NCBI RefSeq assembly: GCF_040938485.1
Contig: NW_027271025.1
Span: 558,001-622,000, forward strand
Reading direction: 5' to 3'
Length of the DNA stretch: 64,000 nt
Source of the DNA: Diadema antillarum
Lineage: Eukaryota
The notes under the pieces are model-generated. The model searched no databases, was not told the DNA's origin, and was given only the letters and a program-made list of their open reading frames with translations. Position numbers and translations under genes: made by a program. Below, piece by piece: positions 1-34,301 of the stretch (position 1 is its first letter; every line of letters begins with the position of its first letter).

Positions 1-1488
1 GGGCATACGCTCGAACTGGTAAAACCCCAAAGGACAAGTGAAGGCCGTCTTCTCCTTGTCAGATTCACGCATCGGGATTTGATAGAATCCCGACTTTAAG
101 TCGATAACAGAAAACCATTTACTGCCACTCAGGGAATCAATGGCCTCCTGTATCAGGGGCACTGTGTACTGGTCGGGAATGGTACGAGAATTGAGTGTAC
201 GGTAGTCGACGCACATTCTCAAAGTACCATTCTTTTTCCGAACCAGCACAATTGGAGAGGCATAGGGACTCTTAGACTCCTTAATTATGTTGTTCTCCAA
301 CAGCTGTTGAAGATGTTGCTGCAAGTCCCTAAGATCAGAGGGAGGCACCCTCCGAGACCTCTCACGGAATGGTGTGTCATCGTTAACACGAATCTGATGC
401 TCCGCATAGCCTGTACTGCCTAGGTCAAATTCATGCCTGGAGAACACATCACTCCTCTGCCTGCACTGATTGAGCAGCCTTTCTTTCCACTCCGGGGAAA
501 TCGGGCCCCAATTGATGGGCAGCTCACTAACGTCAACTTGAGGGGAAGGGGTGTTATCGCCTACATTAGCACCTACTTGGGAATGGGTTGCCTCGGTGTA
601 ACTGTGAGGCTGGGTAGGAAAACTACTAGGGGTAGGGAAACACTTGTCGGGGACATAGGCATCTACTATTGGGCAGTTGCCAGGGACAGTGATAGACTCA
701 GGGCTACTATTGGTCACCAGCACCCTTACCTTTCCAATCGCACCACCTGACAATTTTTGTACTCCTGGGGCTATGTGTAACCCACTTGGAAGTCTGCTGT
801 GGGGATTGGACTCTACGAAAACAGTCATTTCTTCTTTCAGGGGATTCCTAATTTGGGCGGTCATTACCAATTTGGAGTGGGGAGGTATTTGCGTGCTATG
901 TCCTTTCTTGGTCCTAGCAGTGCCCAATTTGCCATCAGGGGACACCTTCTCTTGTTTCGATATGCTGGCGTAGATATCCCTGCAGGTAGCACTTATCTGC
1001 AATGACTGGGCAAAGCGTGCTCCAGCCATCCTCCTACAAGATTCAAAACAGTGCCTGAAAAGTCCTGAATTAGTGCCAATAATCACTCTATGGTCACAGG
1101 GACGCTGGGGGTCTGGTACTACAAGAGCCAATGTACTAAACTCAGTCCCTGTGCCAGCAAATGACCGTTCAAAACCTATGTTGACGTAAGCCCAACCCAG
1201 ATAGGGCATAGTCCCATCTCCTCCATGGTACAGGACTAGGTCACTCAGTCCATGCAATTCCCTATCTAGTGTGTCGAAAAGGCTCTTGTGTATAAGAGTG
1301 ACCTGAGACCCACTATCAAGAAGGCATTTTGTCTCCTTTCCATCTATCCAACATTTTGGGTTGATAGCATCTCCTACTAAACCTTCAGGAACATCGTTCT
1401 TGGAAACCTCAACTTTAGAAACAAGTGGGGGAGAATCTATTTTTGGGGCCCCTGGTTTCCCCTTCCCAGGCGCCCTTTCTCGTTTCCC
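1..1488 (-). CDS. pol: Pol of unit 1 (protease and start of RT), cut by the window edge
   Basis: Same sequence as unit 2 at offset 9387. Protease motif LLDSGSQVT is present. Confidence 0.9.
1428..1488 (-). promoter_or_regulatory. -1 ribosomal frameshift signal (G GGA AAC plus predicted pseudoknot); copies at 10815-10875, 20204-20264, 29596-29656
   Basis: In-phase heptamer, 6-nt spacer, stem GGGCGCCUGG/CCAGGGGCCC, and loop GGGGA complementary to downstream UCCCC. pol is in the -1 frame and has no ATG near its start. Confidence 0.8.
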
Positions 1489-2870
1489 TGGTTGCCAAGG
1501 ATGTAGTTGACAAGTCTTTTACTCAGTACGTCAGGGGGAACAGAATTTTGGCAATTTCTACTGATATGGCCCTCCTCTCCACACTTGAAGCAAACAACAC
1601 CAGTATTACTCTGCTGGGACGACTGAGATTTGGGGGGATTATTGGTGGGTTGGGGTGCTGGTGGAGGTGCTGGTTGGGGAAGGACATGGGGTTGAGGGGC
1701 TGCGTGGGGTGGCAGAATAGAGGGCTCTACCTTACGGTGGGCAGCCTGCTTTGGTTTTGGGCTAACGGGGGGTCTCGAGGCAGACAGAGATTTCTTCACC
1801 CTTTCCTCTTCTTCCTGCTTCCTCACTGAAGACAGGAGTTCCAGGAAGGATGGTGGTTTCTCCAGGCGCTCCCTGAGCTGTAGGTTTACTAGGAGCATTT
1901 CATGGTAGAGGATGCCCCTGATGAATTGTCGCAGTCTCACCTTGTTGGCGTCATGTGGCTTGACAACTCCCCGCCTAACCACATGGCGCATGACTTCCTG
2001 TAAGCGAGAAAGATACTCAGAGGGAGACTCACCTTCAGCCTGGACTGTCTGATGAAATCTGACAAACAGTTCATCATCTGTGTCAGTATCGCCAAAAGCC
2101 AGATCCAGAGCCCTGAGGTAGTCTGCAGAGCAGGCCTGGGGATTCTCACGCCTAAGGTCTGTAATGATGCTTGACGCAGGCGGACGCAATGACTCACGAA
2201 TGCGCTTGCGCCGCTCAGCATCATCCAGAGTCTGCCACTCCTCCATCTGGCTCTCAACGTGCTCTATCCAGATGGGGTAGCTATCCTCATCACGCGCTGC
2301 TGTCTTTGCACCAGAGAAGCATCGCAGTTTCCGATACCCTGTGGTCAGCCCACACCGTGCTAGTGAAGCTGCTAAAATTGGGATGTCTCGATCAGGGAAG
2401 GACATGGATGGTTCACTGATACCAGGGGAAGGGGGTGGAAGGTTGTTAGTAGTAGGGATGTCTTGAGACTGGACTTCCTGAGCTCTACGTCCTGCTTTTC
2501 TCCATTCCCTAACTAAACCTCTCTCCCTCAGGTCCTTGACACTGACCCTATTTCCTCTGACTGGTCCTAAACCGTCTAACCTCACTACTCTGCACATAGT
2601 CTCCCCATCTACTGGAATGACAATCTGTGCCTGTAATCCTAACATAGCAACTGCATCTTCGAATTCACACAGGAGCAATGTTTCCCCTGTATCGGGATCA
2701 TCCCGTCTTAACACCTCAAGTAATGTGGGATATAACTCTGACAGTGCCAGTGCAAACACCTCTGTTGGCACAGTCTTTATACCTGTTGCAAGTAGGAGGG
2801 CATTCTCTACTCTAATCTCCTCCTTCTTGCACCAATCCTGACCAATCTGCTTCAAACTTTTACCTGCCAT
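1437..2870 (-). CDS. gag: Gag, PNMA/Ma-like capsid with CCHC zinc knuckle (unit 1, 477 aa)
   Basis: Contains RKLRCFSG...W...LRPPA...YLRALDLAFG...Q..GE..SEYLSRL (PNMA-type capsid) and CFKCGEEGHISRNC. First ATG (MAGKSL, context GCGATGG) is at 2870; the ORF track start at 2960 is a TTG. Confidence 0.93.
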   Translation of the reverse strand: MAGKSLKQIGQDWCKKEEIRVENALLLATGIKTVPTEVFALALSELYPTLLEVLRRDDPDTGETLLLCEFEDAVAMLGLQAQIVIPVDGETMCRVVRLDGLGPVRGNRVSVKDLRERGLVREWRKAGRRAQEVQSQDIPTTNNLPPPSPGISEPSMSFPDRDIPILAASLARCGLTTGYRKLRCFSGAKTAARDEDSYPIWIEHVESQMEEWQTLDDAERRKRIRESLRPPASSIITDLRRENPQACSADYLRALDLAFGDTDTDDELFVRFHQTVQAEGESPSEYLSRLQEVMRHVVRRGVVKPHDANKVRLRQFIRGILYHEMLLVNLQLRERLEKPPSFLELLSSVRKQEEEERVKKSLSASRPPVSPKPKQAAHRKVEPSILPPHAAPQPHVLPQPAPPPAPQPTNNPPKSQSSQQSNTGVVCFKCGEEGHISRNCQNSVPPDVLSKRLVNYILGNQGNEKGRLGRGNQGPQK

Positions 2871-3025
2871 CGCTTTGTTTCCTGCACACGAGTGTTGGCT
2901 CTTTGGTACAATAGAACGAAAATGGTGAATGTAACAGTAACAATCAACAATGATAACCAAGACTCAGTTTCGGTAACATGTGTCACCAAACAAATGCAAT
3001 TATACAATTAAGAAACAATTATAGT

Positions 3026-3042
3026 TCCCGGACAAGCCCCCA
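3026..3042 (-). other. Primer-binding site, tRNA-Pro; copies at 12413-12429, 21802-21818, 31194-31210
   Basis: Minus strand TGGGGGCTTGTCCGGGA is complementary to the 3' end of eukaryotic tRNA-Pro (...UCCCGGACGAGCCCCCA) with one G.U pair, 5 nt after the LTR end. Confidence 0.9.
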
Positions 3043-3047
3043 ATTTA

Positions 3048-6000
3048 TGTAACCCGAATGTTACACTCCCGAGTTCATAAATAAAGAATATCACACCTGG
3101 GATTCAGTTTTGACAAAATAATCCAATGACAAACTTTATTAACTTGTTTGTCGTTCAACAAAGTACATCATTCAATTCAATATGTTCACAGACTCAAATG
3201 TAACCTTTGTTACATTAGCATAATTAAATATTTGCCAGTGTATGACGATATTTCGACTCGTTGCTGTCTCTTTGTCTCTCTCGCCGGTTATCCTGTCGAC
3301 GAGCCCAGAGTAGTCGCAAACCAGTCGTACACGGTAGCTGATGCAATGCTCAGTAGCCGTCAGTCACGCTGAACCAAGCAAAGGCTGGCCAAAGCTCTCG
3401 TCCAAATATGTATCTAGTCAAAAGAATTTATAAGACACAGGACTTTCCTAATATAGTGTCTTTCTAATCAATAATATTTCTTCAGGAGTATGGAAGTCCA
3501 CTCCAAAATCTGATCTGATACATTGTCTCTACATATACATGCCTCATAAACATATATGAGCGCATTAGACAATACAGATACAAATTCCAGTCACATACAT
3601 TCAAATGTTTGTCAATTCATTTTGACATACAGGTGCTAAATACGGTCAGAATAACTTCTCTTCAGTTAAACATTTTCAGCATCCTGAATTATATCCAACA
3701 CTGCTGCCACAAATAAAGCTTTGATCTATCTGATCGACTGGCAGTATAGTTGCTTCATCTGGGGTCGACAAATATTGTGACTCCGATTCAAATATTATAG
3801 TTTGAGTGGAAATAATGCTCCACGCACACAATAATTACACTGAGCAGTTGTACACCTTACCACGCATGTACAGTTAACATGTATACATTCTAAAGAGCAT
3901 GAATGTATAACCTTTTTATATTCACAATGGCACAACTATTCCTCACATTTAGTTCTTTGCAAGGTTCTTCACATCTAGTGGCTAGTCCTCCCCCTCTAGA
4001 GTTAAACATTCCACAATTCAATAGTGCAGTGACCTCTGTCACTCACAGGGAACGGTCAGTGGACATAAATCTGTCAGTTCAGACGAGGGGGGGGGGGTGC
4101 TGCACATTGTAGACCTCAATGTTTACGAGCATAGCCTCACTTTCTCTGAGTGTGAGGGTCTACCGGGCATTTCAATATGTATGTAATCAAATTAAAATCT
4201 GACTTCTAATGCCAAGTCAGTTTCCCAATTTCATCTGTCTAATAATGAACTTGAGTGTATGCCTAATCATGTCCATTCATAAAACATTCGAAGCGCAAAT
4301 ACCTTGAAGTGCATTGCAATATATCTTCAAATAATATACAAGCAACAATCATCAATCATCAATACTTTTGGCATAACATATGATAACTTCGGAATTTATA
4401 TACATGATATCAGAGTCTTCTTCTTAACAAGCAACCTCCATGTCTATGGATTGGGGTTCATAATTACAAACACTCTCCAATGCAATACATAACATGAGAA
4501 ATACAATGACTTACCTAGTCAAAAGAGCCAACACTCGTTTTCACTACAAGTTGCTCCACACGGCAGTCAGTGGATGTACGTGCCACAACCAGTTGTATCA
4601 CAGGCACATAAAAATTGTATATAACAATACAGCTGATGCTTGTGGGGGTCTACCAGTGTTTTGTGGTAACCTCTCAGCAGATAAATGTGTGAAAAAACTT
4701 TCTGGATCACACAGTCGATGTAACAAGCAAAGTGGGTGCAGGCCTCAAAGCGCTGGCAGGAAGCAGATATGCCTATTTGCTCCAAAGCTATGGGCTTTTA
4801 TAATTTTCTGTCTCTCTGTAAAATGTTAATATTACAAACTTTCTCGAGAAAATCAGAAACTTCCAGGAAGTTAACTGACCAGCAGAAATTTCATTGGTTC
4901 ATGTTTCTATGACATCATTCAAAGTCTGCCTCATTGGCTAGAGGTCACTCATTCCCCTTGACTTCCAGGAACATTACTGACGTACTGACCATCCACTTGG
5001 CCAGACAAAGTCTTAACATTGACCAAGGGCAGTAACGACAGGCTTTCCAGTCACTCTCGAGCATTCTGCCTACAGGGCTTTAAAGTTGCACTCCTGTGAC
5101 CTTGGTCACTAGAGCTGCTGCCTAACCAGCATAGCTATATAACACATTGTTTATACTCATGCAAACACCGATCTAGTTAACATACTAGACAAATCGTATA
5201 GCATAAGTCATAAGAGCACTCAATTAGAATATAGAGACATAATTATATCTCATTTGCATAAATGATGTATTAAACATAACCACTGCACATACATATCTCT
5301 TATGCTGAAGTGCGTGGATCACACTTTGTTCTGAACACATGACATATCAAATAATAATCTTGCAAAAAGTCATATCCTTTCAGCCATTGATCATAGTAGC
5401 ACAACAGTATCTGTAATATAAAAGGTAACACGAGCAAAGTAAATCTAGTAATGTATGGAGTTACTCTACTTTAAGGCACACGCAAAGCTAGCCTAAACAG
5501 TTCATTGGAAATTAGGGGGGGGGTATGTGAGAAGAAAGGAATAGGAGGGGACAGAATTTGGGCTAGACGTGCACTCTACGTCATTGTCACAGAAAATGTT
5601 GGTCTACAGTTAGAACCAGTCCACTCTGTATAGGCTTTGCCCATGGTAGGACACTGTCCCTAAATCCCAAAGCAACTACTACTTTGTCCTAGCAAGAATG
5701 ACCTTCCTCTTCTGAGACATGGTCCTTTCGTTTCTCTTGATGTGCCTACACACCAACAAAAGGGAGGGGTGCTTAAAACAATATCCCTAGACTGGCTAGC
5801 TTGCTCCATCCTTGAGTTTTATTACACCTACATAGTCTAACACCAGCAGGGGCGTTTCACAGGGCTTGACCAGTCTCAATACACACAGGCTTACAATTGG
5901 ACATTGGCTATTGGGGTCAAAGGCTGAAGGGGAAATCTTAAGACTAATCTTGGGGGTTACTAGTACACTGGTCGAGGGGTTGTTGGAAAACAGGTGGGGT

Positions 6001-6131
6001 ACGGACGTCAGAGGAGGGATGAATGGAGGGGGTGGTGATAACAGTGACCATGGGTCTTCCAAGGAAGTAGGAATCTAGTCTGACGACATTTCTGGAGAAA
6101 TCTTAGTAACCCAAATTTTGGTGGGGTTACA
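3048..6131 (-). repeat. LTR 1 (3084 bp), shared between units
   Basis: Ends are TGTAACCC...GGGTTACA (8-bp terminal inverted repeat, TG...CA). PBS lies 5 nt outside one end and PPT abuts the other. Confidence 0.95.
4796..4971 (-). promoter_or_regulatory. Probable LTR promoter: TATAAAA, two CCAAT boxes, a CRE-like site and two TTCCAGGAA sites (present in all four LTRs)
   Basis: TATAAAA at 4796-4802 (minus). CCAAT at 4893-4897 and 4933-4937 (minus). TGACATCA at 4910-4917. TTCCAGGAA at 4861-4869 and 4963-4971. Order and orientation fit element-sense transcription. Confidence 0.6.
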
Positions 6132-6143
6132 TCCTCCCCTTTC
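6132..6143 (-). other. Polypurine tract; copies at 15521-15532 and 24913-24924
   Basis: Minus strand GAAAGGGGAGGA lies directly before the LTR TGTAAC. Confidence 0.9.
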
Positions 6144-6173
6144 AAACCAGGGTTCACTCCTGTGAACCTTTGA

Positions 6174-6911
6174 TTAATCAAAGCCAAAGATCTTACGCTT
6201 AAGGTCAGCAAAAAATCCTGATGAAGTTGCTTGCCTAGCACCAGAGGGTTCACCAAGGGTATCGTACTGCATGCGTAGCGGCGGCCTTGAAGAGCGAGTT
6301 GAGCGCCTGATGGATTGCGGGGCAGGCTCTGAATCGATTGCTTGCTTTGCATTTTGCGCTTGCTCAACCTCGGGCTCTGCTAGAGTATGAGGGGCGTTAC
6401 CTCTGGACTCTGCGTCTGGGGGTAAAGGGCTAGTGTGTCTACTCTCTTCCTCCATGCTCTCCCCTCTCAAATCGGGTACTGCATCATCCGGTGTTGCTCT
6501 ACCAGAACCACTGGATGCACTTGTGGCATCTATGCTGATGTCACTGCCAGCCTGGTTCTCTAAGTCTGAGTCGGTTGATGTCTCCTCAGTAGTGGGGTCA
6601 GGGGATAAAACGGAACCGCCGGAAACACCTGTGTCACTCACTACATCAGCTGTGTTGACCTGTTCAGGGGTCTCGCTGGTAGTCTCAGAGGGAATACTGG
6701 GAGGTTGGGAGGGGACAAACTCTGGCGCATTTACGTTAAGTACTGAATGTGGGCGGTTAATGTGCTTGCGTACACCCCTCATCACTTGAGTCTGAACTAT
6801 CAGACTCTTCCTCACTCGGAGGGGCAATGGACCTTTTGGAACGGGTCCGATCAGCTGGATTCCTTTTCTTACCTGGTCTCTGGGTCTCTGAGTTATGGGC
6901 TGGGGCCTCAT
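6174..6911 (-). CDS. 3' tail ORF in the +1 frame to pol, low complexity, with a PAM2-like motif and RRSTR..RPP...Y..LGEP; copies at 15563-16300 and 24955-25692
   Basis: Seen in the ORF track. The terminal motif resembles Pol C-termini of related Gypsy elements, so this may be a frameshifted Pol tail rather than an independent ORF. Confidence 0.6.
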   Translation of the reverse strand: MRPQPITQRPRDQVRKGIQLIGPVPKGPLPLRVRKSLIVQTQVMRGVRKHINRPHSVLNVNAPEFVPSQPPSIPSETTSETPEQVNTADVVSDTGVSGGSVLSPDPTTEETSTDSDLENQAGSDISIDATSASSGSGRATPDDAVPDLRGESMEEESRHTSPLPPDAESRGNAPHTLAEPEVEQAQNAKQAIDSEPAPQSIRRSTRSSRPPLRMQYDTLGEPSGARQATSSGFFADLKRKIFGFD

Positions 6912-7320
6912 TCAAGTACTCTATGGGTAGGAGAAGGTTGCGGTGTAGGGTGCGTGTCCTACCAATCCCGTCTTCAGGTGCAACTTCGTAAACCGGCATA
7001 TCAGGGTTGAGTCGCTTTGTGATGACATAAGGGTTCGCATACCATCTATCAGCTAATTTCTGCTTACCAGTCAGTCCAACGTTCCTGACAAGGACGCGAT
7101 CGCCAGGTTTCAGGCCATTGGCTCGCACTTTCGCATCATAGCGGACCTTGTTGGCACTGGCAGACTTGTTGGATGCAGCTGACGCAAGTTTATACGCCCG
7201 CGTAAGTTGATCGCGCAAACCACTGACGTACTTCACGTGGTCAGTCCCAGTGAAATTGTCAGGGCTTGTGCCAAATCGCAGATCAACAGGCAGTCTAGCT
7301 TCCCTACCGAACATGAGGAA
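6757..7320 (-). pseudogene. Integrase C-terminal part (GPY/F-type module and acidic tail), in frame behind the amber codon; copies at 16146-16709 and 25538-26101
   Basis: GFSP-TAG-FLMFGREARLPVDL...PYVITKR...YEV...RTLHRNLLLP is the normal continuation of Gypsy integrase. Confidence 0.88.
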
Positions 7321-10300
7321 CTAAGGTGAGAAACCAGTACTGTCATTCCTTGAACAATTGTAAGCGTGTACAAGTGCACTTACGTACTTGCTCCAATTTG
7401 CCTTCTTCTCCTCCTCCAGGGTCCCTAGCATGTCCAGTAGCGTTCTGTTGAAACGCTCAGGCTGAGGGTCTCCCTGGGGATGGTAAGGAGTTGTCCTTGA
7501 TTTCTTAATGCCAAGGAGCCTTGACAGCTCATGGATCACTTTACTCTCAAAGTCCCTACCTTGATCAGAATGAAGGCGTTGGGGCAGACCATAATGTACA
7601 AAGAAGTTCTCCCACAGGACCTTGGCGACAGTGGCAGCAGTCTGATCCTTCGTTGGGAAGGCTTGTGCGTATCGTGTGTAGTGATCCGTCACTACCAAGA
7701 TAGACTTCTTATTCGAGCGGTCTGGTTCTAGGGAGAGAAAGTCCATGCAAACCAGCTCCAGGGGGCTGGTTGTGTGAATACTCACCAATGGGGCTGCTGG
7801 CTTTGGAGGAGTCTTTCTTGCTATACAACGAGGGCAATGCTTGACCCACTCCGTAATGTCAGCACTCATCTTTGGCCAGTAGAACCTGTCTCTAGCCAAC
7901 GCTATGGACTTCTCGATTCCAAGGTGGCCAACACTGTCGTGTATGCCCCTCATTGCCTCGACACGGCGCTGGGCAGGCAATACTAACTGGTGATGGCGGT
8001 TCCCTAAGGAGTCAGTGAAAGTTCTGTAGAGGACTCCTTTGCACAGAACTAGCCTGTCGAACTCGCGGAGTATCAGGGCAGCCTCTCTTGAAAGGCCGGT
8101 ATAAGACTGTGGCCTCTCCCCACGTTCAACATAATCCCTGACTAGTTTCAGTTGCGGATCTGCCTTTTGAGCCTGTGCCCAGTCTACTACATTCAGGTCT
8201 GAGCCCTTCGCATACAGACCTGGGATAGACTCTGCACTGGCACACAGGGTCTCAACGTATGGCTGGCTTCTATGAGGAGAGTTGGCTGAAACATAATGCG
8301 TCTGACAGAAGGCAGAGAGTGTGGACACTTTCTCACCTGAGTCTGACGTCTCATGCAGCCTTGCCTCCAGATCACTAATCTTGCACTGCTGGCGAGCCTC
8401 AAACTCCTTGTCGAGGCCGGGAGGATGTGGTTTCCGTGACAGTACATCTGCTTCAATGTTCGTCTTTCCTGGCTTATAATGGATGGAAAAATCAAAGCAG
8501 GAAAGTGCAGCAAGCCATCTATGTCCTGTGGCATCGAGTTTTGCCGATGTCAGGACATATGTTAGTGGGTTATTATCAGTCATAACCCGCGCACCTTTTG
8601 CTGCATACAGATAATCCCTGAACTTGTCGGTAACTGCCCACTTTAGAGCAAGAAATTCCAGCTTGTGGGCTGGATAGTTCTTCTCACTGTGGGACAGTCC
8701 CCGACTTCCATATGCCACTGGACGAAGCTTACCTCCATGATCTTGATACAGGACACCACCCAGTCCATCACGGCTGGCATCAACATGGAGCACAAAGGGC
8801 TTTGACAGGTCTGCGAAGGCTAAGACTGGGGCTGTGACCAGACAATGCTTCAAAGCCTGAAAAGCATTCTCACACTCCTCAGTCCAAGCATCACCAAGGG
8901 GGTCACTTGCCTTTCGTGCATCCGGGCTCGGATCTTTCTTTGGAGGTGGACGTCCTCGCTTCCTGGGGTAAACGCACCCACTTGTAAGTGCGTTCAAAGG
9001 ACGGGAAATCTTGGCATAGTCCTTTATGAATCGCCGGTAATAGCCAGCAAATCCTAAGAAAGACTTGACATGCCTCACTGTCTGTGGCCTGGGCCAGGTT
9101 CTTACATCGGCCACTTTGTCTGGGTCTGTCTGTACCCCAGCCTCGGAGACTACATGACCAAGGTACCTAACCGACTGACAGCAAAATTGGCATTTTTCTG
9201 GGGACACCTTCAAGCCAAATTGCTGCAACCTATCCAGTACCCTAGCCAGGCGCTCCTCCATTTCCTCCAGCGTTTTGGAGAAGATTATCAGGTCATCCAT
9301 GTACACCAACACCTCTAACATGTTCAGACCTGACATGCACTTCTCCATCAGCCTCTGGAAGGTTGCTGGTGCTCCCTTCACCCCTTGGGGCATACGCTCG
9401 AACTGGTAAAACCCCAAAGGACAAGTGAAGGCCGTCTTCTCCTTGTCAGATTCACGCATCGGGATTTGATAGAATCCCGACTTTAAGTCGATAACAGAAA
9501 ACCATTTACTGCCACTCAGGGAATCAATGGCCTCCTGTATCAGGGGCACTGTGTACTGGTCGGGAATGGTACGAGAATTGAGTGTACGGTAGTCGACGCA
9601 CATTCTCAAAGTACCATTCTTTTTCCGAACCAGCACAATTGGAGAGGCATAGGGACTCTTAGACTCCTTAATTATGTTGTTCTCCAACAGCTGTTGAAGA
9701 TGTTGCTGCAAGTCCCTAAGATCAGAGGGAGGCACCCTCCGAGACCTCTCACGGAATGGTGTGTCATCGTTAACACGAATCTGATGCTCCGCATAGCCTG
9801 TACTGCCTAGGTCAAATTCATGCCTGGAGAACACATCACTCCTCTGCCTGCACTGATTGAGCAGCCTTTCTTTCCACTCCGGGGAAATCGGGCCCCAATT
9901 GATGGGCAGCTCACTAACGTCAACTTGAGGGGAAGGGGTGTTATCGCCTACATTAGCACCTACTTGGGAATGGGTTGCCTCGGTGTAACTGTGAGGCTGG
10001 GTAGGAAAACTACTAGGGGTAGGGAAACACTTGTCGGGGACATAGGCATCTACTATTGGGCAGTTGCCAGGGACAGTGATAGACTCAGGGCTACTATTGG
10101 TCACCAGCACCCTTACCTTTCCAATCGCACCACCTGACAATTTTTGTACTCCTGGGGCTATGTGTAACCCACTTGGAAGTCTGCTGTGGGGATTGGACTC
10201 TACGAAAACAGTCATTTCTTCTTTCAGGGGATTCCTAATTTGGGCGGTCATTACCAATTTGGAGTGGGGAGGTATTTGCGTGCTATGTCCTTTCTTGGTC

Positions 10301-12257: not shown

Positions 12258-12434
12258 CGCTTTGTTTCCTGCACACGAGTGTTGGCTCTTTGGTACAATA
12301 GAACGAAAATGGTGAATGTAACAGTAACAATCAACAATGATAACCAAGACTCAGTTTCGGTAACATGTGTCACCAAACAAATGCAATTATACAATTAAGA
12401 AACAATTATAGTTCCCGGACAAGCCCCCAATTTA

Positions 12435-24912: not shown

Positions 24913-26101
24913 TCCTCCCCTTTCAAACCAGGGTTCACTCCTGTGAACCTTTGATTAATCAAAGCCAAAGATCTTACGCTTAAGGTCAGCAAAAAATCCT
25001 GATGAAGTTGCTTGCCTAGCACCAGAGGGTTCACCAAGGGTATCGTACTGCATGCGTAGCGGCGGCCTTGAAGAGCGAGTTGAGCGCCTGATGGATTGCG
25101 GGGCAGGCTCTGAATCGATTGCTTGCTTTGCATTTTGCGCTTGCTCAACCTCGGGCTCTGCTAGAGTATGAGGGGCGTTACCTCTGGACTCTGCGTCTGG
25201 GGGTAAAGGGCTAGTGTGTCTACTCTCTTCCTCCATGCTCTCCCCTCTCAAATCGGGTACTGCATCATCCGGTGTTGCTCTACCAGAACCACTGGATGCA
25301 CTTGTGGCATCTATGCTGATGTCACTGCCAGCCTGGTTCTCTAAGTCTGAGTCGGTTGATGTCTCCTCAGTAGTGGGGTCAGGGGATAAAACGGAACCGC
25401 CGGAAACACCTGTGTCACTCACTACATCAGCTGTGTTGACCTGTTCAGGGGTCTCGCTGGTAGTCTCAGAGGGAATACTGGGAGGTTGGGAGGGGACAAA
25501 CTCTGGCGCATTTACGTTAAGTACTGAATGTGGGCGGTTAATGTGCTTGCGTACACCCCTCATCACTTGAGTCTGAACTATCAGACTCTTCCTCACTCGG
25601 AGGGGCAATGGACCTTTTGGAACGGGTCCGATCAGCTGGATTCCTTTTCTTACCTGGTCTCTGGGTCTCTGAGTTATGGGCTGGGGCCTCATTCAAGTAC
25701 TCTATGGGTAGGAGAAGGTTGCGGTGTAGGGTGCGTGTCCTACCAATCCCGTCTTCAGGTGCAACTTCGTAAACCGGCATATCAGGGTTGAGTCGCTTTG
25801 TGATGACATAAGGGTTCGCATACCATCTATCAGCTAATTTCTGCTTACCAGTCAGTCCAACGTTCCTGACAAGGACGCGATCGCCAGGTTTCAGGCCATT
25901 GGCTCGCACTTTCGCATCATAGCGGACCTTGTTGGCACTGGCAGACTTGTTGGATGCAGCTGACGCAAGTTTATACGCCCGCGTAAGTTGATCGCGCAAA
26001 CCACTGACGTACTTCACGTGGTCAGTCCCAGTGAAATTGTCAGGGCTTGTGCCAAATCGCAGATCAACAGGCAGTCTAGCTTCCCTACCGAACATGAGGA
26101 A

Positions 26102-29100
26102 CTAAGGTGAGAAACCAGTACTGTCATTCCTTGAACAATTGTAAGCGTGTACAAGTGCACTTACGTACTTGCTCCAATTTGCCTTCTTCTCCTCCTCCAG
26201 GGTCCCTAGCATGTCCAGTAGCGTTCTGTTGAAACGCTCAGGCTGAGGGTCTCCCTGGGGATGGTAAGGAGTTGTCCTTGATTTCTTAATGCCAAGGAGC
26301 CTTGACAGCTCATGGATCACTTTACTCTCAAAGTCCCTACCTTGATCAGAATGAAGGCGTTGGGGCAGACCATAATGTACAAAGAAGTTCTCCCACAGGA
26401 CCTTGGCGACAGTGGCAGCAGTCTGATCCTTCGTTGGGAAGGCTTGTGCGTATCGTGTGTAGTGATCCGTCACTACCAAGATAGACTTCTTATTCGAGCG
26501 GTCTGGTTCTAGGGAGAGAAAGTCCATGCAAACCAGCTCCAGGGGGCTGGTTGTGTGAATACTCACCAATGGGGCTGCTGGCTTTGGAGGAGTCTTTCTT
26601 GCTATACAACGAGGGCAATGCTTGACCCACTCCGTAATGTCAGCACTCATCTTTGGCCAGTAGAACCTGTCTCTAGCCAACGCTATGGACTTCTCGATTC
26701 CAAGGTGGCCAACACTGTCGTGTATGCCCCTCATTGCCTCGACACGGCGCTGGGCAGGCAATACTAACTGGTGATGGCGGTTCCCTAAGGAGTCAGTGAA
26801 AGTTCTGTAGAGGACTCCTTTGCACAGAACTAGCCTGTCGAACTCGCGGAGTATCAGGGCAGCCTCTCTTGAAAGGCCGGTATAAGACTGTGGCCTCTCC
26901 CCACGTTCAACATAATCCCTGACTAGTTTCAGTTGCGGATCTGCCTTTTGAGCCTGTGCCCAGTCTACTACATTCAGGTCTGAGCCCTTCGCATACAGAC
27001 CTGGGATAGACTCTGCACTGGCACACAGGGTCTCAACGTATGGCTGGCTTCTATGAGGAGAGTTGGCTGAAACATAATGCGTCTGACAGAAGGCAGAGAG
27101 TGTGGACACTTTCTCACCTGAGTCTGACGTCTCATGCAGCCTTGCCTCCAGATCACTAATCTTGCACTGCTAGCGAGCCTCAAACTCCTTGTCGAGGCCG
27201 GGAGGATGTGGTTTCCGTGACAGTACATCTGCTTCAATGTTCGTCTTTCCTGGCTTATAATGGATGGAAAAATCAAAGCAGGAAAGTGCAGCAAGCCATC
27301 TATGTCCTGTGGCATCGAGTTTTGCCGATGTCAGGACATATGTTAGTGGGTTATTATCAGTCATAACCCGCGCACCTTTTGCTGCATACAGATAATCCCT
27401 GAACTTGTCGGTAACTGCCCACTTTAGAGCAAGAAATTCCAGCTTGTGGGCTGGATAGTTCTTCTCACTGTGGGACAGTCCCCGACTTCCATATGCCACT
27501 GGACGAAGCTTACCTCCATGATCTTGATACAGGACACCACCCAGTCCATCACGGCTGGCATCAACATGGAGCACAAAGGGCTTTGACAGGTCTGCGAAGG
27601 CTAAGACTGGGGCTGTGACCAGACAATGCTTCAAAGCCTGAAAAGCATTCTCACACTCCTCAGTCCAAGCATCACCAAGGGGGTCACTTGCCTTTCGTGC
27701 ATCCGGGCTCGGATCTTTCTTTGGAGGTGGACGTCCTCGCTTCCTGGGGTAAACGCACCCACTTGTAAGTGCGTTCAAAGGACGGGAAATCTTGGCATAG
27801 TCCTTTATGAATCGCCGGTAATAGCCAGCAAATCCTAAGAAAGACTTGACATGCCTCACTGTCTGTGGCCTGGGCCAGGTTCTTACATCGGCCACTTTGT
27901 CTGGGTCTGTCTGTACCCCAGCCTCGGAGACTACATGACCAAGGTACCTAACCGACTGACAGCAAAATTGGCATTTTTCTGGGGACACCTTCAAGCCAAA
28001 TTGCTGCAACCTATCCAGTACCCTAGCCAGGCGCTCCTCCATTTCCTCCAGCGTTTTGGAGAAGATTATCAGGTCATCCATGTACACCAACACCTCTAAC
28101 ATGTTCAGACCTGACATGCACTTCTCCATCAGCCTCTGGAAGGTTGCTGGTGCTCCCTTCACCCCTTGGGGCATACGCTCGAACTGGTAAAACCCCAAAG
28201 GACAAGTGAAGGCCGTCTTCTCCTTGTCAGATTCACGCATCGGGATTTGATAGAATCCCGACTTTAAGTCGATAACAGAAAACCATTTACTGCCACTCAG
28301 GGAATCAATGGCCTCCTGTATCAGGGGCACTGTGTACTGGTCGGGAATGGTACGAGAATTGAGTGTACGGTAGTCGACGCACATTCTCAAAGTACCATTC
28401 TTTTTCCGAACCAGCACAATTGGAGAGGCATAGGGACTCTTAGACTCCTTAATTATGTTGTTCTCCAACAGCTGTTGAAGATGTTGCTGCAAGTCCCTAA
28501 GATCAGAGGGAGGCACCCTCCGAGACCTCTCACGGAATGGTGTGTCATCGTTAACACGAATCTGATGCTCCGCATAGCCTGTACTGCCTAGGTCAAATTC
28601 ATGCCTGGAGAACACATCACTCCTCTGCCTGCACTGATTGAGCAGCCTTTCTTTCCACTCCGGGGAAATCGGGCCCCAATTGATGGGCAGCTCACTAACG
28701 TCAACTTGAGGGGAAGGGGTGTTATCGCCTACATTAGCACCTACTTGGGAATGGGTTGCCTCGGTGTAACTGTGAGGCTGGGTAGGAAAACTACTAGGGG
28801 TAGGGAAACACTTGTCGGGGACATAGGCATCTACTATTGGGCAGTTGCCAGGGACAGTGATAGACTCAGGGCTACTATTGGTCACCAGCACCCTTACCTT
28901 TCCAATCGCACCACCTGACAATTTTTGTACTCCTGGGGCTATGTGTAACCCACTTGGAAGTCTGCTGTGGGGATTGGACTCTACGAAAACAGTCATTTCT
29001 TCTTTCAGGGGATTCCTAATTTGGGCGGTCATTACCAATTTGGAGTGGGGAGGTATTTGCGTGCTATGTCCTTTCTTGGTCCTAGCAGTGCCCAATTTGC

Positions 29101-29656
29101 CATCAGGGGACACCTTCTCTTGTTTCGATATGCTGGCGTAGATATCCCTGCAGGTAGCACTTATCTGCAATGACTGGGCAAAGCGTGCTCCAGCCATCCT
29201 CCTACAAGATTCAAAACAGTGCCTGAAAAGTCCTGAATTAGTGCCAATAATCACTCTATGGTCACAGGGACGCTGGGGGTCTGGTACTACAAGAGCCAAT
29301 GTACTAAACTCAGTCCCTGTGCCAGCAAATGACCGTTCAAAACCTATGTTGACGTAAGCCCAACCCAGATAGGGCATAGTCCCATCTCCTCCATGGTACA
29401 GGACTAGGTCACTCAGTCCATGCAATTCCCTATCTAGTGTGTCGAAAAGGCTCTTGTGTATAAGAGTGACCTGAGACCCACTATCAAGAAGGCATTTTGT
29501 CTCCTTTCCATCTATCCAACATTTTGGGTTGATAGCATCTCCTACTAAACCTTCAGGAACATCGTTCTTGGAAACCTCAACTTTAGAAACAAGTGGGGGA
29601 GAATCTATTTTTGGGGCCCCTGGTTTCCCCTTCCCAGGCGCCCTTTCTCGTTTCCC
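26102..29656 (-). pseudogene. pol: Pol of unit 4 with a private CAG>TAG nonsense codon between RNase H and integrase
   Basis: g>a at 27172 splits the ORF into 751 aa and 335 aa. Confidence 0.92.
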
Positions 29657-31038
29657 TGGTTGCCAAGGATGTAGTTGACAAGTCTTTTACTCAGTACGTC
29701 AGGGGGAACAGAATTTTGGCAATTTCTACTGATATGGCCCTCCTCTCCACACTTGAAGCAAACAACACCAGTATTACTCTGCTGGGACGACTGAGATTTG
29801 GGGGGATTATTGGTGGGTTGGGGTGCTGGTGGAGGTGCTGGTTGGGGAAGGACATGGGGTTGAGGGGCTGCGTGGGGTGGCAGAATAGAGGGCTCTACCT
29901 TACGGTGGGCAGCCTGCTTTGGTTTTGGGCTAACGGGGGGTCTCGAGGCAGACAGAGATTTCTTCACCCTTTCCTCTTCTTCCTGCTTCCTCACTGAAGA
30001 CAGGAGTTCCAGGAAGGATGGTGGTTTCTCCAGGCGCTCCCTGAGCTGTAGGTTTACTAGGAGCATTTCATGGTAGAGGATGCCCCTGATGAATTGTCGC
30101 AGTCTCACCTTGTTGGCGTCATGTGGCTTGACAACTCCCCGCCTAACCACATGGCGCATGACTTCCTGTAAGCGAGAAAGATACTCAGAGGGAGACTCAC
30201 CTTCAGCCTGGACTGTCTGATGAAATCTGACAAACAGTTCATCATCTGTGTCAGTATCGCCAAAAGCCAGATCCAGAGCCCTGAGGTAGTCTGCAGAGCA
30301 GGCCTGGGGATTCTCACGCCTAAGGTCTGTAATGATGCTTGACGCAGGCGGACGCAATGACTCACGAATGCGCTTGCGCCGCTCAGCATCATCCAGAGTC
30401 TGCCACTCCTCCATCTGGCTCTCAACGTGCTCTATCCAGATGGGGTAGCTATCCTCATCACGCGCTGCTGTCTTTGCACCAGAGAAGCATCGCAGTTTCC
30501 GATACCCTGTGGTCAGCCCACACCGTGCTAGTGAAGCTGCTAAAATTGGGATGTCTCGATCAGGGAAGGACATGGATGGTTCACTGATACCAGGGGAAGG
30601 GGGTGGAAGGTTGTTAGTAGTAGGGATGTCTTGAGACTGGACTTCCTGAGCTCTACGTCCTGCTTTTCTCCATTCCCTAACTAAACCTCTCTCCCTCAGG
30701 TCCTTGACACTGACCCTATTTCCTCTGACTGGTCCTAAACCGTCTAACCTCACTACTCTGCACATAGTCTCCCCATCTACTGGAATGACAATCTGTGCCT
30801 GTAATCCTAACATAGCAACTGCATCTTCGAATTCACACAGGAGCAATGTTTCCCCTGTATCGGGATCATCCCGTCTTAACACCTCAAGTAATGTGGGATA
30901 TAACTCTGACAGTGCCAGTGCAAACACCTCTGTTGGCACAGTCTTTATACCTGTTGCAAGTAGGAGGGCATTCTCTACTCTAATCTCCTCCTTCTTGCAC
31001 CAATCCTGACCAATCTGCTTCAAACTTTTACCTGCCAT
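29605..31038 (-). CDS. gag: Gag (unit 4)
   Basis: Translation identical to unit 1. Confidence 0.93.
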   Translation of the reverse strand: MAGKSLKQIGQDWCKKEEIRVENALLLATGIKTVPTEVFALALSELYPTLLEVLRRDDPDTGETLLLCEFEDAVAMLGLQAQIVIPVDGETMCRVVRLDGLGPVRGNRVSVKDLRERGLVREWRKAGRRAQEVQSQDIPTTNNLPPPSPGISEPSMSFPDRDIPILAASLARCGLTTGYRKLRCFSGAKTAARDEDSYPIWIEHVESQMEEWQTLDDAERRKRIRESLRPPASSIITDLRRENPQACSADYLRALDLAFGDTDTDDELFVRFHQTVQAEGESPSEYLSRLQEVMRHVVRRGVVKPHDANKVRLRQFIRGILYHEMLLVNLQLRERLEKPPSFLELLSSVRKQEEEERVKKSLSASRPPVSPKPKQAAHRKVEPSILPPHAAPQPHVLPQPAPPPAPQPTNNPPKSQSSQQSNTGVVCFKCGEEGHISRNCQNSVPPDVLSKRLVNYILGNQGNEKGRLGRGNQGPQK

Positions 31039-31215
31039 CGCTTTGTTTCCTGCACACGAGTGTTGGCTCTTTGGTACAATAGAACGAAAATGGTGAATGT
31101 AACAGTAACAATCAACAATGATAACCAAGACTCAGTTTCGGTAACATGTGTCACCAAACAAATGCAATTATACAATTAAGAAACAATTATAGTTCCCGGA
31201 CAAGCCCCCAATTTA

Positions 31216-34200
31216 TGTAACCCGAATGTTACACTCCCGAGTTCATAAATAAAGAATATCACACCTGGGATTCAGTTTTGACAAAATAATCCAATGACAA
31301 ACTTTATTAACTTGTTTGTCGTTCAACAAAGTACATCATTCAATTCAATATGTTCACAGACTCAAATGTAACCTTTGTTACATTAGCATAATTAAATATT
31401 TGCCAGTGTATGACGATATTTCGACTCGTTGCTGTCTCTTTGTCTCTCTCGCCGGTTATCCTGTCGACGAGCCCAGAGTAGTCGCAAACCAGTCGTACAC
31501 GGTAGCTGATGCAATGCTCAGTAGCCGTCAGTCACGCTGAACCAAGCAAAGGCTGGCCAAAGCTCTCGTCCAAATATGTATCTAGTCAAAAGAATTTATA
31601 AGACACAGGACTTTCCTAATATAGTGTCTTTCTAATCAATAATATTTCTTCAGGAGTATGGAAGTCCACTCCAAAATCTGATCTGATACATTGTCTCTAC
31701 ATATACATGCCTCATAAACATATATGAGTGCATTAGACAATACAGATACAAATTCCAGTCACATACATTCAAATGTTTGTCAATTCATTTTGACATACAG
31801 GTGCTAAATACGGTCAGAATAACTTCTCTTCAGTTAAACATTTTCAGCATCCTGAATTATATCCAACACTGCTGCCACAAATAAAGCTTTGATCTATCTG
31901 ATCGACTGGCAGTATAGTTGCTTCATCTGGGGTCGACAAATATTGTGACTCCGATTCAAATATTATAGTTTGAGTGGAAATAATGCTCCACGCACACAAT
32001 AATTACACTGAGCAGTTGTACACCTTACCACGCATGTACAGTTAACATGTATACATTCTAAAGAGCATGAATGTATAACCCTTTTATATTCACAATGGCA
32101 CAACTATTCCTCACATTTAGTTCTTTGCAAGGTTCTTCACATCTAGTGGCTAGTCCTCCCCCTCTAGAGTTAAACATTCCACAATTCAATAGTGCAGTGA
32201 CCTCTGTCACTCACAGGGAACGGTCAGTGGACATAAATCTGTCAGTTCAGACGAGGGGGGGGGGTGCTGCACATTGTAGACCTCAATGTTTACGAGCATA
32301 GCCTCACTTTCTCTGAGTGTGAGGGTCTACCGGGCATTTCAATATGTATGTAATCAAATTAAAATCTGACTTCTAATGCCAAGTCAGTTTCCCAATTTCA
32401 TCTGTCTAATAATGAACTTGAGTGTATGCCTAATCATGTCCATTCATAAAACATTCGAAGCGCAAATACCTTGAAGTGCATTGCAATATATCTTCAAATA
32501 ATATACAAGCAACAATCATCAATCATCAATACTTTTGGCATAACATATGATAACTTCGGAATTTATATACATGATATCAGAGTCTTCTTCTTAACAAGCA
32601 ACCTCCATGTCTATGGATTGGGGTTCATAACTACAAACACTCTCCAATGCAATACATAACATGAGAAATACAATGACTTACCTAGTCAAAAGAGCCAACA
32701 CTCGTTTTCACTACAAGTTGCTCCACACGGCAGTCAGTGGATGTACGTGCCACAACCAGTTGTATCACAGGCACATAAAAATTGTATATAACAATACAGC
32801 TGATGCTTGTGGGGGTCTACCAGTGTTTTGTGGTAACCTCTCAGCAGATAAATGTGTGAAAAAACTTTCTGGATCACACAGTCGATGTAACAAGCAAAGT
32901 GGGTGCAGGCCTCAAAGCGCTGGCAGGAAGCAGATATGCCTATTTGCTCCAAAGCTATGGGCTTTTATAATTTTCTGTCTCTCTGTAAAATGTTAATATT
33001 ACAAACTTTCTCGAGAAAATCAGAAACTTCCAGGAAGTTAACTGACCAGCAGAAATTTCATTGGTTCATGTTTCTATGACATCATTCAAAGTCTGCCTCA
33101 TTGGCTAGAGGTCACTCATTCCCCTTGACTTCCAGGAACATTACTGACGTACTGACCATCCACTTGGCCAGACAAAGTCTTAACATTGACCAAGGGCAGT
33201 AACGACAGGCTTTCCAGTCACTCTCGAGCATTCTGCCTACAGGGCTTTAAAGTTGCACTCCTGTGACCTTGGTCACTAGAGCTGCTGCCTAACCAGCATA
33301 GCTATATAACACATTGTTTATACTCATGCAAACACCGATCTAGTTAACATACTAGACAAATCGTATAGCATAAGTCATAAAAGCACTCAATTAGAATATA
33401 GAGACATAATTATATCTCATTTGCATAAATGATGTATTAAACATAACCACTGCACATACATATCTCTTATGCTGAAGTGCGTGGATCACACTTTGTTCTG
33501 AACACATGACATATCAAATAATAATCTTGCAAAAAGTCATATCCTTTCAGCCATTGATCATAGTAGCACAACAGTATCTGTAATATAAAAGGTAACACGA
33601 GCAAAGTAAATCTAGTAATGTATGGAGTTACTCTACTTTAAGGCACACGCAAAGCTAGCCTAAACAGTTCATTGGAAATTAGGGGGGGGGGGGTATGTGA
33701 GAAGAAAGGAATAGGAGGGGGCAGAATTTGGGCTAGACGTGCACTCTACGTCATTGTCACAGAAAATGTTGGTCTACAGTTAGAACCAGTCCACTCTGTA
33801 TAGGCTTTGCCCATGGTAGGACACTGTCCCTAAATCCCAAAGCAACTACTACTTTGTCCTAGCAAGAATGACCTTCCTCTTCTGAGACATGGTCCTTTCG
33901 TTTCTCTTGATGTGCCTACACACCAACAAAAGGGAGGGGTGCTTAAAACAATATCCCTAGACTGGCTAGCTTGCTCCATCCTTGAGTTTTATTACACCTA
34001 CATAGTCTAACACCAGCAGGGGCGTTTCACAGGGCTTGACCAGTCTCAATACACACAGGCTTACAATTGGACATTGGCTATTGGGGTCAAAGGCTGAAGG
34101 GGAAATCTTAAGACTAATCTTGGGGGTTACTAGTACACTGGTCGAGGGGTTGTTGGAAAACAGGTGGGGTACGGACGTCAGAGGAGGGATGAATGGAGGG

Positions 34201-34301
34201 GGTGGTGATAACAGTGACCATGGGTCTTCCAAGGAAGTAGGTATCTAGTCTGACGACATTTCTGGAGAAATCTTAGTAACCCAAATTTTGGTGGGGTTAC
34301 A
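31216..34301 (-). repeat. LTR 4 (3086 bp), outermost 5' LTR of the array
   Basis: Same termini. PBS is on the inner side, but the outer side is unrelated MITE sequence (catgcaaaac...) instead of a PPT. Confidence 0.95.

What the first reader, a model, noticed from the sequence alone, without database searches (positions are those of the whole stretch)
1..34301. At least four Gypsy units in a head-to-tail array sharing single LTRs
Seen: exact LTR-internal alternation with 6303-bp internal regions and only one LTR between units. Each inner LTR has a PBS on one side and a PPT on the other, so it serves as both 3' and 5' LTR. Established: normal integrase-mediated insertion gives LTR-internal-LTR. 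Shared-LTR multimers arise by unequal LTR-LTR exchange, by recombination of cDNA or 1-LTR circles into an existing LTR, or by rolling-circle amplification. Inference: more than 34 kb of near-identical copies means very recent or ongoing amplification. Non-homopolymer private substitutions (11809, 13299, 5214, 27172) argue against a pure assembly artefact, but do not exclude it.
Basis: partly seen in the sequence, partly recalled or inferred. Interest (0 to 1): 0.8.

Follow-up and report, generated by a model that had tools for sequence, protein, structure and literature searches.

The report
Shared-LTR tandem array of Gypsy retrotransposon
One Gypsy-type retrotransposon insertion in what is probably a sea-urchin genome has been copied side by side into four or five units that share single LTRs; this is a clean animal example of a process already known from yeasts, flies and plants.

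Summary
The element lies on the minus strand. The array spans window -6343 to 34301 (40,645 bp). It holds five 3.09-kb LTRs and four 6,303-bp internal regions, and one 4-bp target-site duplication (CATG) brackets the whole array.

Other copies of the family in this genome are mostly ordinary LTR-internal-LTR pairs about 9.4 kb apart, so the 3.09-kb block is a true LTR.

A second contig (C447) holds the same insertion site with six LTRs and five internal regions. It is most likely the other haplotype, because the assembly keeps both haplotypes.

The inner LTRs are chimeras. They match the 5' LTR on the R-U5 side and the 3' LTR on the U3 side, switching between LTR columns 509 and 514. One derived base is shared only by the 5' LTR and the inner LTRs.

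A derived amber codon in integrase is missing from the unit next to the 3' LTR and present in all other units on both contigs. So growth was stepwise.

The best reading is one insertion followed by out-of-register homologous exchange. Recombination of cDNA without integrase is not excluded. The unit count is uncertain, because HiFi reads averaged 6.8 kb. This is a known kind of structure.

The parts
1..3047 (-). Window part of internal region 1, the 3'-most unit. The whole region is window -3255..3047. Its pol frame is uninterrupted (1,382 codons).
3048..6131 (-). Inner LTR 2 (3,084 bp), a chimera. It has one private substitution at 5214.
6132..12434 (-). Internal region 2 (6,303 bp). It holds gag at 10824-12347 (PNMA plus zf-CCHC), pol running from about 10905 down to 7324 (RT, RNase H, integrase), a further open frame 6757-7314 in the pol frame, and a 245-aa ORF at 6174-6911.
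7321..7323 (-). Derived amber codon in the integrase part of pol, after the catalytic core. The same codon lies at 16710-16712 and 26102-26104. The 3'-most unit has a sense codon here.
12413..12429 (-). Primer-binding site (minus strand TGGGGGCTTGTCCGGGA), 5 nt after the LTR end. It is repeated next to every LTR except the 3'-terminal one.
12435..15520 (-). Inner LTR 3 (3,086 bp). It has one private substitution at 13299. An AATAAA signal lies about 90 nt before its 3' end.
12943..12948 (.). Switch interval of the chimeric LTR (LTR columns 509-514). Left of it the inner LTRs match the 5' LTR, and right of it they match the 3' LTR. The same interval lies at 3556-3561 and 22332-22337.
15521..15532 (-). 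Polypurine tract (minus strand GAAAGGGGAGGA) abutting the 5' end of the LTR.
15521..21823 (-). Internal region 3 (6,303 bp). It has no private substitution.
21824..24912 (-). Inner LTR 4 (3,089 bp). It differs only in poly-G length.
24913..31215 (-). Internal region 4 (6,303 bp), the 5'-most unit. It has the amber codon plus a second nonsense codon at 27170-27172.
31216..34301 (-). 5'-terminal LTR (L5). Its private derived bases at LTR cols 514, 1419 and 2509 are shared with contig C447. Those at cols 866 and 3030 occur in this contig only.
34302..34305 (.). Target-site duplication CATG. The other copy lies directly left of the array at window -6347..-6344.

Best explanation
A Ty3/Gypsy LTR retrotransposon was inserted once by integrase at a CATG site. 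It has 3.09-kb LTRs, a PNMA-like gag with a CCHC knuckle, and pol in the order RT, RNase H, integrase.

After its two LTRs had diverged by about 0.2%, the 5' LTR of one copy of the locus paired with the 3' LTR of another. The partner was a sister chromatid or the homologue. A crossover between LTR columns 509 and 514 produced a dimer with one chimeric middle LTR.

An amber mutation then arose in the integrase region of the upstream unit. With 9.4 kb of perfect out-of-register homology now available, further unequal exchanges copied that unit. This gave 4 units on one haplotype and 5 on the other, as assembled.

Shown here: the structure, the single TSD, the chimeric LTRs, the polarity of the amber mutation, and the presence of the array on two contigs.
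Inferred: that the exchanges were chromosomal crossovers rather than cDNA events, and the order of events.
For: 1. Extent and ends. The array spans window -6343..34301 with a complete LTR at each end, and CATG lies on both sides. The chance of a 4-bp match is 1/256.

2. True LTR. Other copies of the family, at 92-98% identity, occur mostly as LTR pairs 9.39-9.43 kb apart or as single hits, for example on C63, C350, C785 and C383.

3. Chimeric inner LTRs. The 3' LTR (L1) differs from all other LTRs at cols 95, 152, 409 and 509. The 5' LTR (L5) differs from all others at cols 514, 1419 and 2509, on both contigs. So the inner LTRs show one switch in the orientation that a 5'LTR x 3'LTR exchange predicts. 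The chance of such complete segregation is 1/35.

4. Shared derived base. At col 95 every outgroup copy and L1 carry G. L5 and all inner LTRs on both contigs carry A. This rules out the inner LTRs being simply the unmutated ancestral sequence.

5. Timing. The inner LTRs are identical to L5 over cols 1-509 and to L1 over cols 514-3086, apart from two singletons. L1 and L5 differ at 7-9 sites. So the first duplication is much younger than the insertion.

6. Stepwise growth. At internal col 1190, all outgroup copies and the L1-adjacent unit have the sense base. The other 3 units in C137 and 4 units in C447 have the amber codon.

7. Second contig. C447:644374-694272 has the same junctions. Its right flank is 100% identical over 2 kb and its left flank has about 3 differences in 2 kb. 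It holds 6 LTRs, and a 141-bp deletion marks one of them. The assembly is reported to retain both haplotypes.

8. Independent sample. In run X2, a different sample and study, a Logan contig runs from the left flank 27 nt into the LTR without mismatch. Its word depth is 7.3, against 33-45 for internal-region contigs. The tool warns against reading depth as copy number, so this is weak evidence.
Against: - No raw long reads could be laid, because every run was available only as Logan contigs. No read spanning internal-LTR-internal was seen, and no proper depth was measured.
- The mean HiFi read (6.8 kb, about 11x per haplotig) is shorter than one unit. About 13.9 kb (13299-27172) carries no unit-specific substitution. 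The counts of 4 and 5 could therefore be wrong.
- The sequence cannot tell a chromosomal crossover from cDNA recombination, because both give the same chimera.
- All five right-hand differences are derived on L5 and none on L1 (one-sided p about 0.03). The R-U5 side carries an excess of differences, 4 in 509 bp against 3 in 2,572 bp (p about 0.02). The simple model explains neither.
It is known only through BLAST coordinates and pattern hits.
Confidence: 0.62

Rival explanations
1. Growth by cDNA without integrase. Reverse-transcribed copies of the element's own RNA, or 1-LTR circles, recombined with the resident element and added units upstream of it. This is what happens for Tf1 lacking integrase, Ty1 with mutant integrase, and Ty5.
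For: - A cDNA LTR is by construction U3 of the 3' LTR plus R-U5 of the 5' LTR. That is the chimera observed.
- The unit with the ancestral sense codon is the 3'-most one. All units upstream of it carry an integrase-truncating amber codon.
- In S. pombe, integrase-defective Tf1 inserts immediately upstream of resident elements and forms tandems separated by one LTR (PMC11042837).
- Gag, RT and RNase H frames are open in units 1-3.
Against: - The 3'-most unit keeps an uninterrupted pol frame, so integrase could be supplied in trans.
- No TATA-like motif lies 25-35 nt upstream of the switch point. The nearest TATAAA (element position 2702) would put the transcription start downstream of it. This is weak evidence.
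- No RNA run or eccDNA data are available.
- Unequal exchange explains the same pattern without extra assumptions.
Confidence: 0.2
2. One-step origin. A multimeric cDNA, a read-through tandem transcript or a rolling-circle concatemer was inserted as a block.
For: - A single TSD brackets the array.
- The units are nearly identical.
- Insertion of a ready-made tandem is raised as a possibility for plant tandems (PMC11899658).
Against: - The two outer LTRs carry 7 fixed differences, while the inner LTRs are clean chimeras of them.
- The amber codon is derived and absent from one unit.
- The two contigs differ in unit number.
- A block copied from one template at one time predicts none of these.
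Confidence: 0.04
3. Assembly artefact. The real locus is a single element or a dimer, and hifiasm over-expanded it. C447 would then be a redundant mis-assembly.
For: - Reads average 6.8 kb, shorter than the 9.39-kb unit, at about 11x per haplotig. The assembly was patched with ONT reads and polished with Illumina reads.
- Most length differences sit in poly-G runs.
Against: - C137 alone holds at least 4 distinct internal-region sequences and 5 distinct LTR sequences, defined by substitutions outside homopolymers.
- C447 independently reproduces the outer-LTR markers and the amber distribution. It adds its own markers: a 141-bp deletion, and different bases at cols 866 and 3030.
- The variants form a coherent genealogy.
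- In run X2 the depth ratio of internal region to junction is about 5 (weak).
Confidence: 0.06
4. Entry into an older solo LTR. A young element DNA recombined once, at cols 509-514, into a pre-existing solo LTR. The outer halves of L1 and L5 would then be the two halves of that old LTR.
For: - Five of six polarised markers are derived on the outer halves: cols 409 and 509 on L1, and cols 514, 1419 and 2509 on L5.
- One crossover would explain why the two sets abut within 5 bp.
Against: - No donor copy closer than 97-98% exists elsewhere in the assembly.
- Col 95 shows that the inner lineage also carries a derived base.
- Five of six is not significant (p about 0.11).
- Further units would still need extra events.
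Confidence: 0.05

Closest known systems
Tandem LTR-retrotransposon structures in rice and other plants (Morales-Diaz et al. 2025, PMC11899658)
   Same: Alternating LTR and internal regions share the inner LTRs. One TSD flanks the whole structure. The elements are mostly Gypsy, and unit number varies between haplotypes.
   Different: The host here is an animal, probably an echinoderm, not a plant. That study could not decide between insertion of a ready-made tandem and illegitimate recombination. Here the chimeric inner LTR and the derived amber codon show a post-insertion, stepwise origin.
Shared-LTR tandems of Drosophila LTR elements (McGurk and Barbash 2018, PMC5932611)
   Same: Ectopic recombination between LTRs yields adjacent elements that share one LTR. 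This is proposed as the first step toward TE-derived satellites.
   Different: Those tandems were inferred from short-read junctions, and families with long LTRs were under-detected. Here a full 40-50 kb array with 3.1-kb LTRs is seen in an assembly. It has only 4-5 units, so it is not a satellite.
Integrase-independent tandem formation by cDNA: Tf1 (PMC11042837), and Ty1 and Ty5 (cited in that paper)
   Same: The tandems are separated by a single LTR. New copies are added upstream of a resident element, and the process is favoured when integrase is defective. Here the upstream units carry a truncated integrase.
   Different: The yeast cases are experimental and Rad52-dependent. Nothing here shows that cDNA was involved, and an uninterrupted pol frame remains in one unit.
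Cassandra TRIM tandem arrays in plants (PMC7215508)
   Same: Arrays of LTR-internal-LTR-internal with variable copy number. Unequal crossing-over is invoked for copy-number change.
   Different: Cassandra is a tiny non-autonomous element (about 13 LTRs plus 12 internal domains give a ~6-kb PCR fragment) that carries 5S sequences. Here the unit is a 9.4-kb coding Gypsy element.

Membership tests
Ty3/Gypsy (Metaviridae) LTR retrotransposon | pol domain order RT, RNase H, integrase | tested here: met
   In the 1,107-aa pol ORF, Pfam finds RVT_1 at 339-498, RT_RNaseH_2 at 587-682, Integrase_H2C2 at 890-945 and rve at 960-1056. No protease family reached E<=0.01.
Ty3/Gypsy (Metaviridae) LTR retrotransposon | Gag with a capsid-like domain and a CCHC zinc knuckle | tested here: met
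   PNMA domain (E 7e-38) and zf-CCHC (E 5e-7) in the 507-aa ORF. The nearest Atlas clusters are PNMA-family proteins.
Ty3/Gypsy (Metaviridae) LTR retrotransposon | LTRs ending TG...CA with short inverted termini, a PBS after the 5' LTR, a PPT before the 3' LTR, and a short TSD | tested here: met
   TGTAACCC...GGGTTACA termini, a TGG-type PBS 5 nt downstream, the PPT GAAAGGGGAGGA, and a 4-bp TSD CATG. The primer tRNA was not identified. A resemblance to tRNA-Pro is from memory only, and no such gene lay in the 264 kb scanned.
Shared-LTR tandem LTR-retrotransposon array | Exactly one LTR between successive internal regions, head to tail | tested here: met
   Five LTRs and four internal regions with no LTR-LTR junction.
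Shared-LTR tandem LTR-retrotransposon array | One target-site duplication around the whole array and none inside it | tested here: met
   CATG on both outer sides. The inner junctions are PPT|LTR and LTR|PBS only.
Shared-LTR tandem LTR-retrotransposon array | Inner LTR recombinant between the 5' and 3' LTRs of the founder | tested here: met
   A single switch between cols 509 and 514 across 7 markers present on both contigs. The derived A at col 95 is shared by L5 and the inner LTRs only.
Shared-LTR tandem LTR-retrotransposon array | Unit number polymorphic between haplotypes or individuals | tested here: inconclusive
   Assembled as 4 units (C137) and 5 units (C447) with identical junctions. 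Read length of 6.8 kb makes the counts unsafe, and no raw reads were available.
Integrase-independent cDNA-recombination tandems (Tf1/Ty1/Ty5 type) | Integrase defective in the copies that were added | tested here: inconclusive
   The added units carry a derived amber codon after the integrase core. One unit keeps the full frame and could act in trans. Loss of function of the truncated protein was not tested.
Integrase-independent cDNA-recombination tandems (Tf1/Ty1/Ty5 type) | cDNA intermediate, with the LTR switch at or 5' of the U3/R boundary | not testable with these tools
   No RNA runs or raw reads were available. The transcription start is unknown, and motif inspection alone is weak.
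TE-derived satellite DNA | Expansion to tens to thousands of units, often with loss of coding capacity | tested here: not met
   Only 4-5 units, no further copies within 200 kb upstream, and the coding frames are largely open.

The most novel reading that the evidence does not exclude
The array was built in an animal germ line by the integrase-independent pathway known from fission yeast. Under this reading, cDNA from units with truncated integrase could not integrate elsewhere. It repeatedly recombined just upstream of its own founder copy, so the locus acts as a self-enlarging reservoir.
Probability: 0.15. Interest if true: 0.7.

Novelty: new member of a known kind. Interest (0 to 1): 0.35.

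Why it matters
Shared-LTR tandems are thought to be the first step from a dispersed retrotransposon to a satellite, and they are a source of structural polymorphism. In most described cases it could not be decided whether the tandem was inserted ready-made or arose afterwards. Here the markers in the two outer LTRs, the outgroup copies and a second haplotype allow the order of events to be read directly: insertion, then a 5'LTR x 3'LTR exchange, then a nonsense mutation, then further copying. The locus would also be a good natural test of whether the integrase-independent pathway seen in yeast operates in animals. The kind of structure itself is not new.

Tried and rejected
- A whole-unit DNA search of the genome failed with too many candidates. 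It was replaced by a 700-bp LTR probe.
C447 and the outgroup copies could therefore not be read. I did not try to obtain them through another tool. They were genotyped marker by marker with 25-26-nt pattern searches.
- Read laying gave only Logan contigs. There are no spanning reads, no usable depth profile and no molecule ends. The array's own markers mostly fall at contig ends and so were not listed.
- I considered that the inner LTRs might simply be the unmutated ancestral sequence, with both outer LTRs mutating independently. Col 95 and the spatial segregation of markers (1/35) reject this.
- I considered an edge effect of long-term concerted evolution. It does not fit. L1 is identical to the inner LTRs over 2,572 bp, yet the region of internal unit 1 just beyond it still differs from the other units.
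- A tRNA scan of 264 kb found no gene matching the PBS.
Full report
**What is there**

The window is G000:C137:558001-622000. Self-comparison shows a tandem repeat over 1-34301 with a period of 9387-9392 bp and 99.84-99.92% identity between copies. No part of a unit is repeated within that unit. All long ORFs lie on the minus strand.

In each unit Pfam finds:
- a gag ORF of 507 aa with a PNMA domain and a CCHC knuckle;
- a pol ORF with RVT_1, RNase H, Integrase_H2C2 and rve, in that order.

This is the Ty3/Gypsy arrangement. The nearest Atlas clusters for gag are PNMA-family proteins.

Read on the minus strand, each 3.09-kb block starts TGTAACCC and ends GGGTTACA. It is preceded directly by the PPT GAAAGGGGAGGA. 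Five nt after it comes TGGGGGCTTGTCCGGGA, a PBS of the usual TGG type.

**The left end**

I fetched the 200 kb upstream of the window. The unit matches only once more there, and the match stops exactly at an LTR end.

The array therefore spans window -6343..34301 (C137:551657-592301), which is 40,645 bp. It has five LTRs (3,088, 3,084, 3,086, 3,089 and 3,086 bp) and four internal regions of exactly 6,303 bp. The flanks read ...AAGCATG|TGTAAC on the left and GGTTACA|CATGCAA on the right. A single 4-bp duplication, CATG, brackets the whole array.

**Is the 3.09-kb block a true LTR?**

A 700-bp LTR probe finds other copies of the family at 89-98% identity. Many occur as pairs 9.39-9.43 kb apart (C63, C350, C785, C383), and others as single hits. 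So the ordinary form of this element is LTR-internal-LTR, and the array is the exception.

There is one further exception. On C1016, hits for three LTR markers and two internal markers alternate. This indicates an LTR-internal-LTR-internal-LTR dimer of an older subfamily.

**A second copy of the locus**

The same probe finds six LTRs on contig C447, spaced 9250, 9391, 9391, 9391 and 9389 bp.
- The 2 kb right of the array match C447 at 100%, ending exactly at the junction.
- The 2 kb left of the array match with about three differences.

So C447:644374-694272 is the same insertion with five internal regions. Its second LTR from the 5' end lacks about 141 bp, including col 2509.

G000 has 1,754,659,819 bases in 2,963 contigs. 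Two papers describe a hifiasm assembly of the sea urchin Diadema antillarum with 1.75 Gb and 2,964 contigs. It has 84% duplicated BUSCOs, and the later paper shows that it retains both haplotypes of one animal. I take the identification as probable and C447 as the other haplotype.

The flanks differ by about 0.075%, against a reported 2.5% genome-wide heterozygosity. This is expected if both haplotypes descend from the one chromosome that received this young insertion.

**Variation inside the array (+ strand columns)**

L1 is the leftmost LTR and the 3' LTR of the element. L5 is the rightmost LTR and the 5' LTR.
- L1 alone differs at LTR cols 95, 152, 409 and 509.
- L5 alone differs at cols 514, 866, 1419, 2509 and 3030.
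- The three inner LTRs agree with L5 at the first set and with L1 at the second set. They carry only two singletons (cols 865 and 2169).

Pattern searches that print the matched letters let me genotype C447 and the outgroup copies:

| LTR col | Outgroup copies | Which LTRs differ | Seen on |
|---|---|---|---|
| 95 | G | L1 keeps G; L5 and all inner LTRs have the derived A | both contigs |
| 409 | G | derived in L1 | both contigs |
| 509 | A | derived in L1 | both contigs |
| 514 | C | derived in L5 | both contigs |
| 1419 | T | derived in L5 | both contigs |
| 2509 | A | derived in L5 | both contigs |
| 866 | T | derived in L5 | C137 only |
| 3030 | A | derived in L5 | C137 only |

So the inner LTRs are chimeras. 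On the element strand, their U3 side comes from the 3' LTR and their R-U5 side from the 5' LTR, with one switch between cols 509 and 514. This is the product expected from pairing the 5' LTR of one copy of the locus with the 3' LTR of another. It is also what reverse transcription produces.

Complete segregation of 4 against 3 markers has a chance of 1/35. The shared derived base at col 95 excludes the idea that the inner LTRs are simply unmutated.

**Timing, in relative terms only**

L1 and L5 differ at 7 sites shared by both contigs, which is 0.23%. The inner LTRs show no difference from their parental halves apart from the two singletons. The internal regions differ pairwise by 1-3 substitutions in 6,303 bp. 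The first duplication therefore happened late, at roughly a tenth of the element's residence time, with wide error.

**Stepwise growth**

Internal col 1190 is the third base of a codon in the integrase part of pol.
- All outgroup copies, and the unit next to L1 on both contigs, have the sense base.
- The other three units on C137 and four units on C447 have an amber codon.

The frame continues for 187 more codons after the amber, so the stop is derived. The 5'-most unit on C137 has a second nonsense codon at 27170-27172.

The order of events is therefore: insertion, first duplication, amber mutation in the upstream unit, then further copying of that unit. The unit that lacks it lies mostly outside the window.

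**Mechanism**

Out-of-register homologous exchange explains everything with known steps and is the textbook route (PMC5932611). Once a dimer exists, 9.4 kb of perfect offset homology makes further gain and loss easy. A difference of 4 against 5 units between haplotypes would follow from this.

The cDNA route cannot be excluded. It gives the same chimera. In fission yeast, integrase-defective Tf1 adds copies immediately upstream of a resident element, separated by one LTR (PMC11042837). Here the ancestral unit is the 3'-most one and the truncated units lie upstream of it. Against this route, a full pol frame is still present in one unit. Also, no promoter motif sits in the right place for the switch point to be the U3/R boundary (weak evidence).

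A one-shot concatemer is disfavoured by the outer-LTR differences, by the derived amber codon missing from one unit, and by the different unit numbers on the two contigs.

**Reliability**

Only Logan contigs were available for the public runs. In run X2, from another sample and study of the same organism, a contig runs from the left flank 27 nt into the LTR without mismatch. Its word depth is 7.3. An 801-bp internal-region contig identical to the array has depth 35.9. The ratio of about 5 fits several units per junction, but the tool warns against using depth as copy number.

HiFi reads averaged 6.8 kb at about 11x per haplotig. About 13.9 kb of the C137 array carries no unit-specific substitution. 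The tandem structure is therefore secure, because it rests on at least 4 distinct internal sequences and 5 distinct LTR sequences here and is reproduced with extra private markers on C447. The exact unit numbers are not secure.

**Unexplained**

- All five right-hand differences are derived on L5 and none on L1.
- The 509-bp R-U5 side holds 4 of the 7 shared differences (p about 0.02).

An alternative in which a young element recombined into an older solo LTR would explain the first point. It lacks a donor copy in the assembly, because the closest other copy is 97-98% identical.

**Comparison with what is known**

Shared-LTR tandems flanked by one TSD, polymorphic in unit number and mostly of Gypsy type, are documented in rice and other plants (PMC11899658). 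They are also documented in Drosophila (PMC5932611), in yeasts (PMC11042837) and for Cassandra (PMC7215508). The first of these papers also mentions them in kangaroo centromeres, and the yeast paper mentions them in bivalves.

This is a new member of a known kind. Its value lies in how clearly the history can be read and as a candidate test locus for the integrase-independent route in an animal.

I observed and compared the copies only.

Noticed in passing
G000:C1016:230118-252849 (not fetched): Marker hits alternate as LTR, internal, LTR, internal, LTR. LTR col 3030 hits lie at 230118, 240064 and 249340. LTR col 95 hits lie at 234357, 242935 and 252825. Internal col 1190 hits lie at 238798 and 248074. 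This is a second shared-LTR tandem (a dimer) of an older subfamily about 92% identical, so tandem formation recurs in this family.
   Followed up: partly
window 34689-36301 and beyond: The right flank, from 388 bp past the array onward, is a very abundant young repeat. There were 9,155 first-look candidates, and all 38 scored full-length copies outside this locus are 99% identical over about 1.6 kb. This family has amplified very recently in this genome.
   Followed up: no
G000:C447, second LTR from the 5' end (about 653811-656710): This LTR is about 141 bp shorter than the others and lacks the col 2509 marker. The deletion is private to the second contig and is useful as a unit-specific tag.
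   Followed up: partly
L001:3714 (LTR column 58; same column in all five LTRs): All five assembled LTRs read C here. The Logan contigs of all four runs laid at 98% or more read only A, at high depth. These are probably more abundant related copies, but it was not resolved.
   Followed up: no
LTR columns 1-509 (for example window 12435-12943): The R-U5 side of the LTR holds 4 of the 7 differences between the outer LTRs, in one sixth of the length (p about 0.02). Col 95 lies immediately upstream of the AATAAA signal.
   Followed up: partly
window 41549-42468 and 60229-61012: An inverted repeat about 920 bp long at 85.5% identity, and a short tandem array with offsets of about 158 bp at 83-92% identity. 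Both are outside the finding.
   Followed up: no
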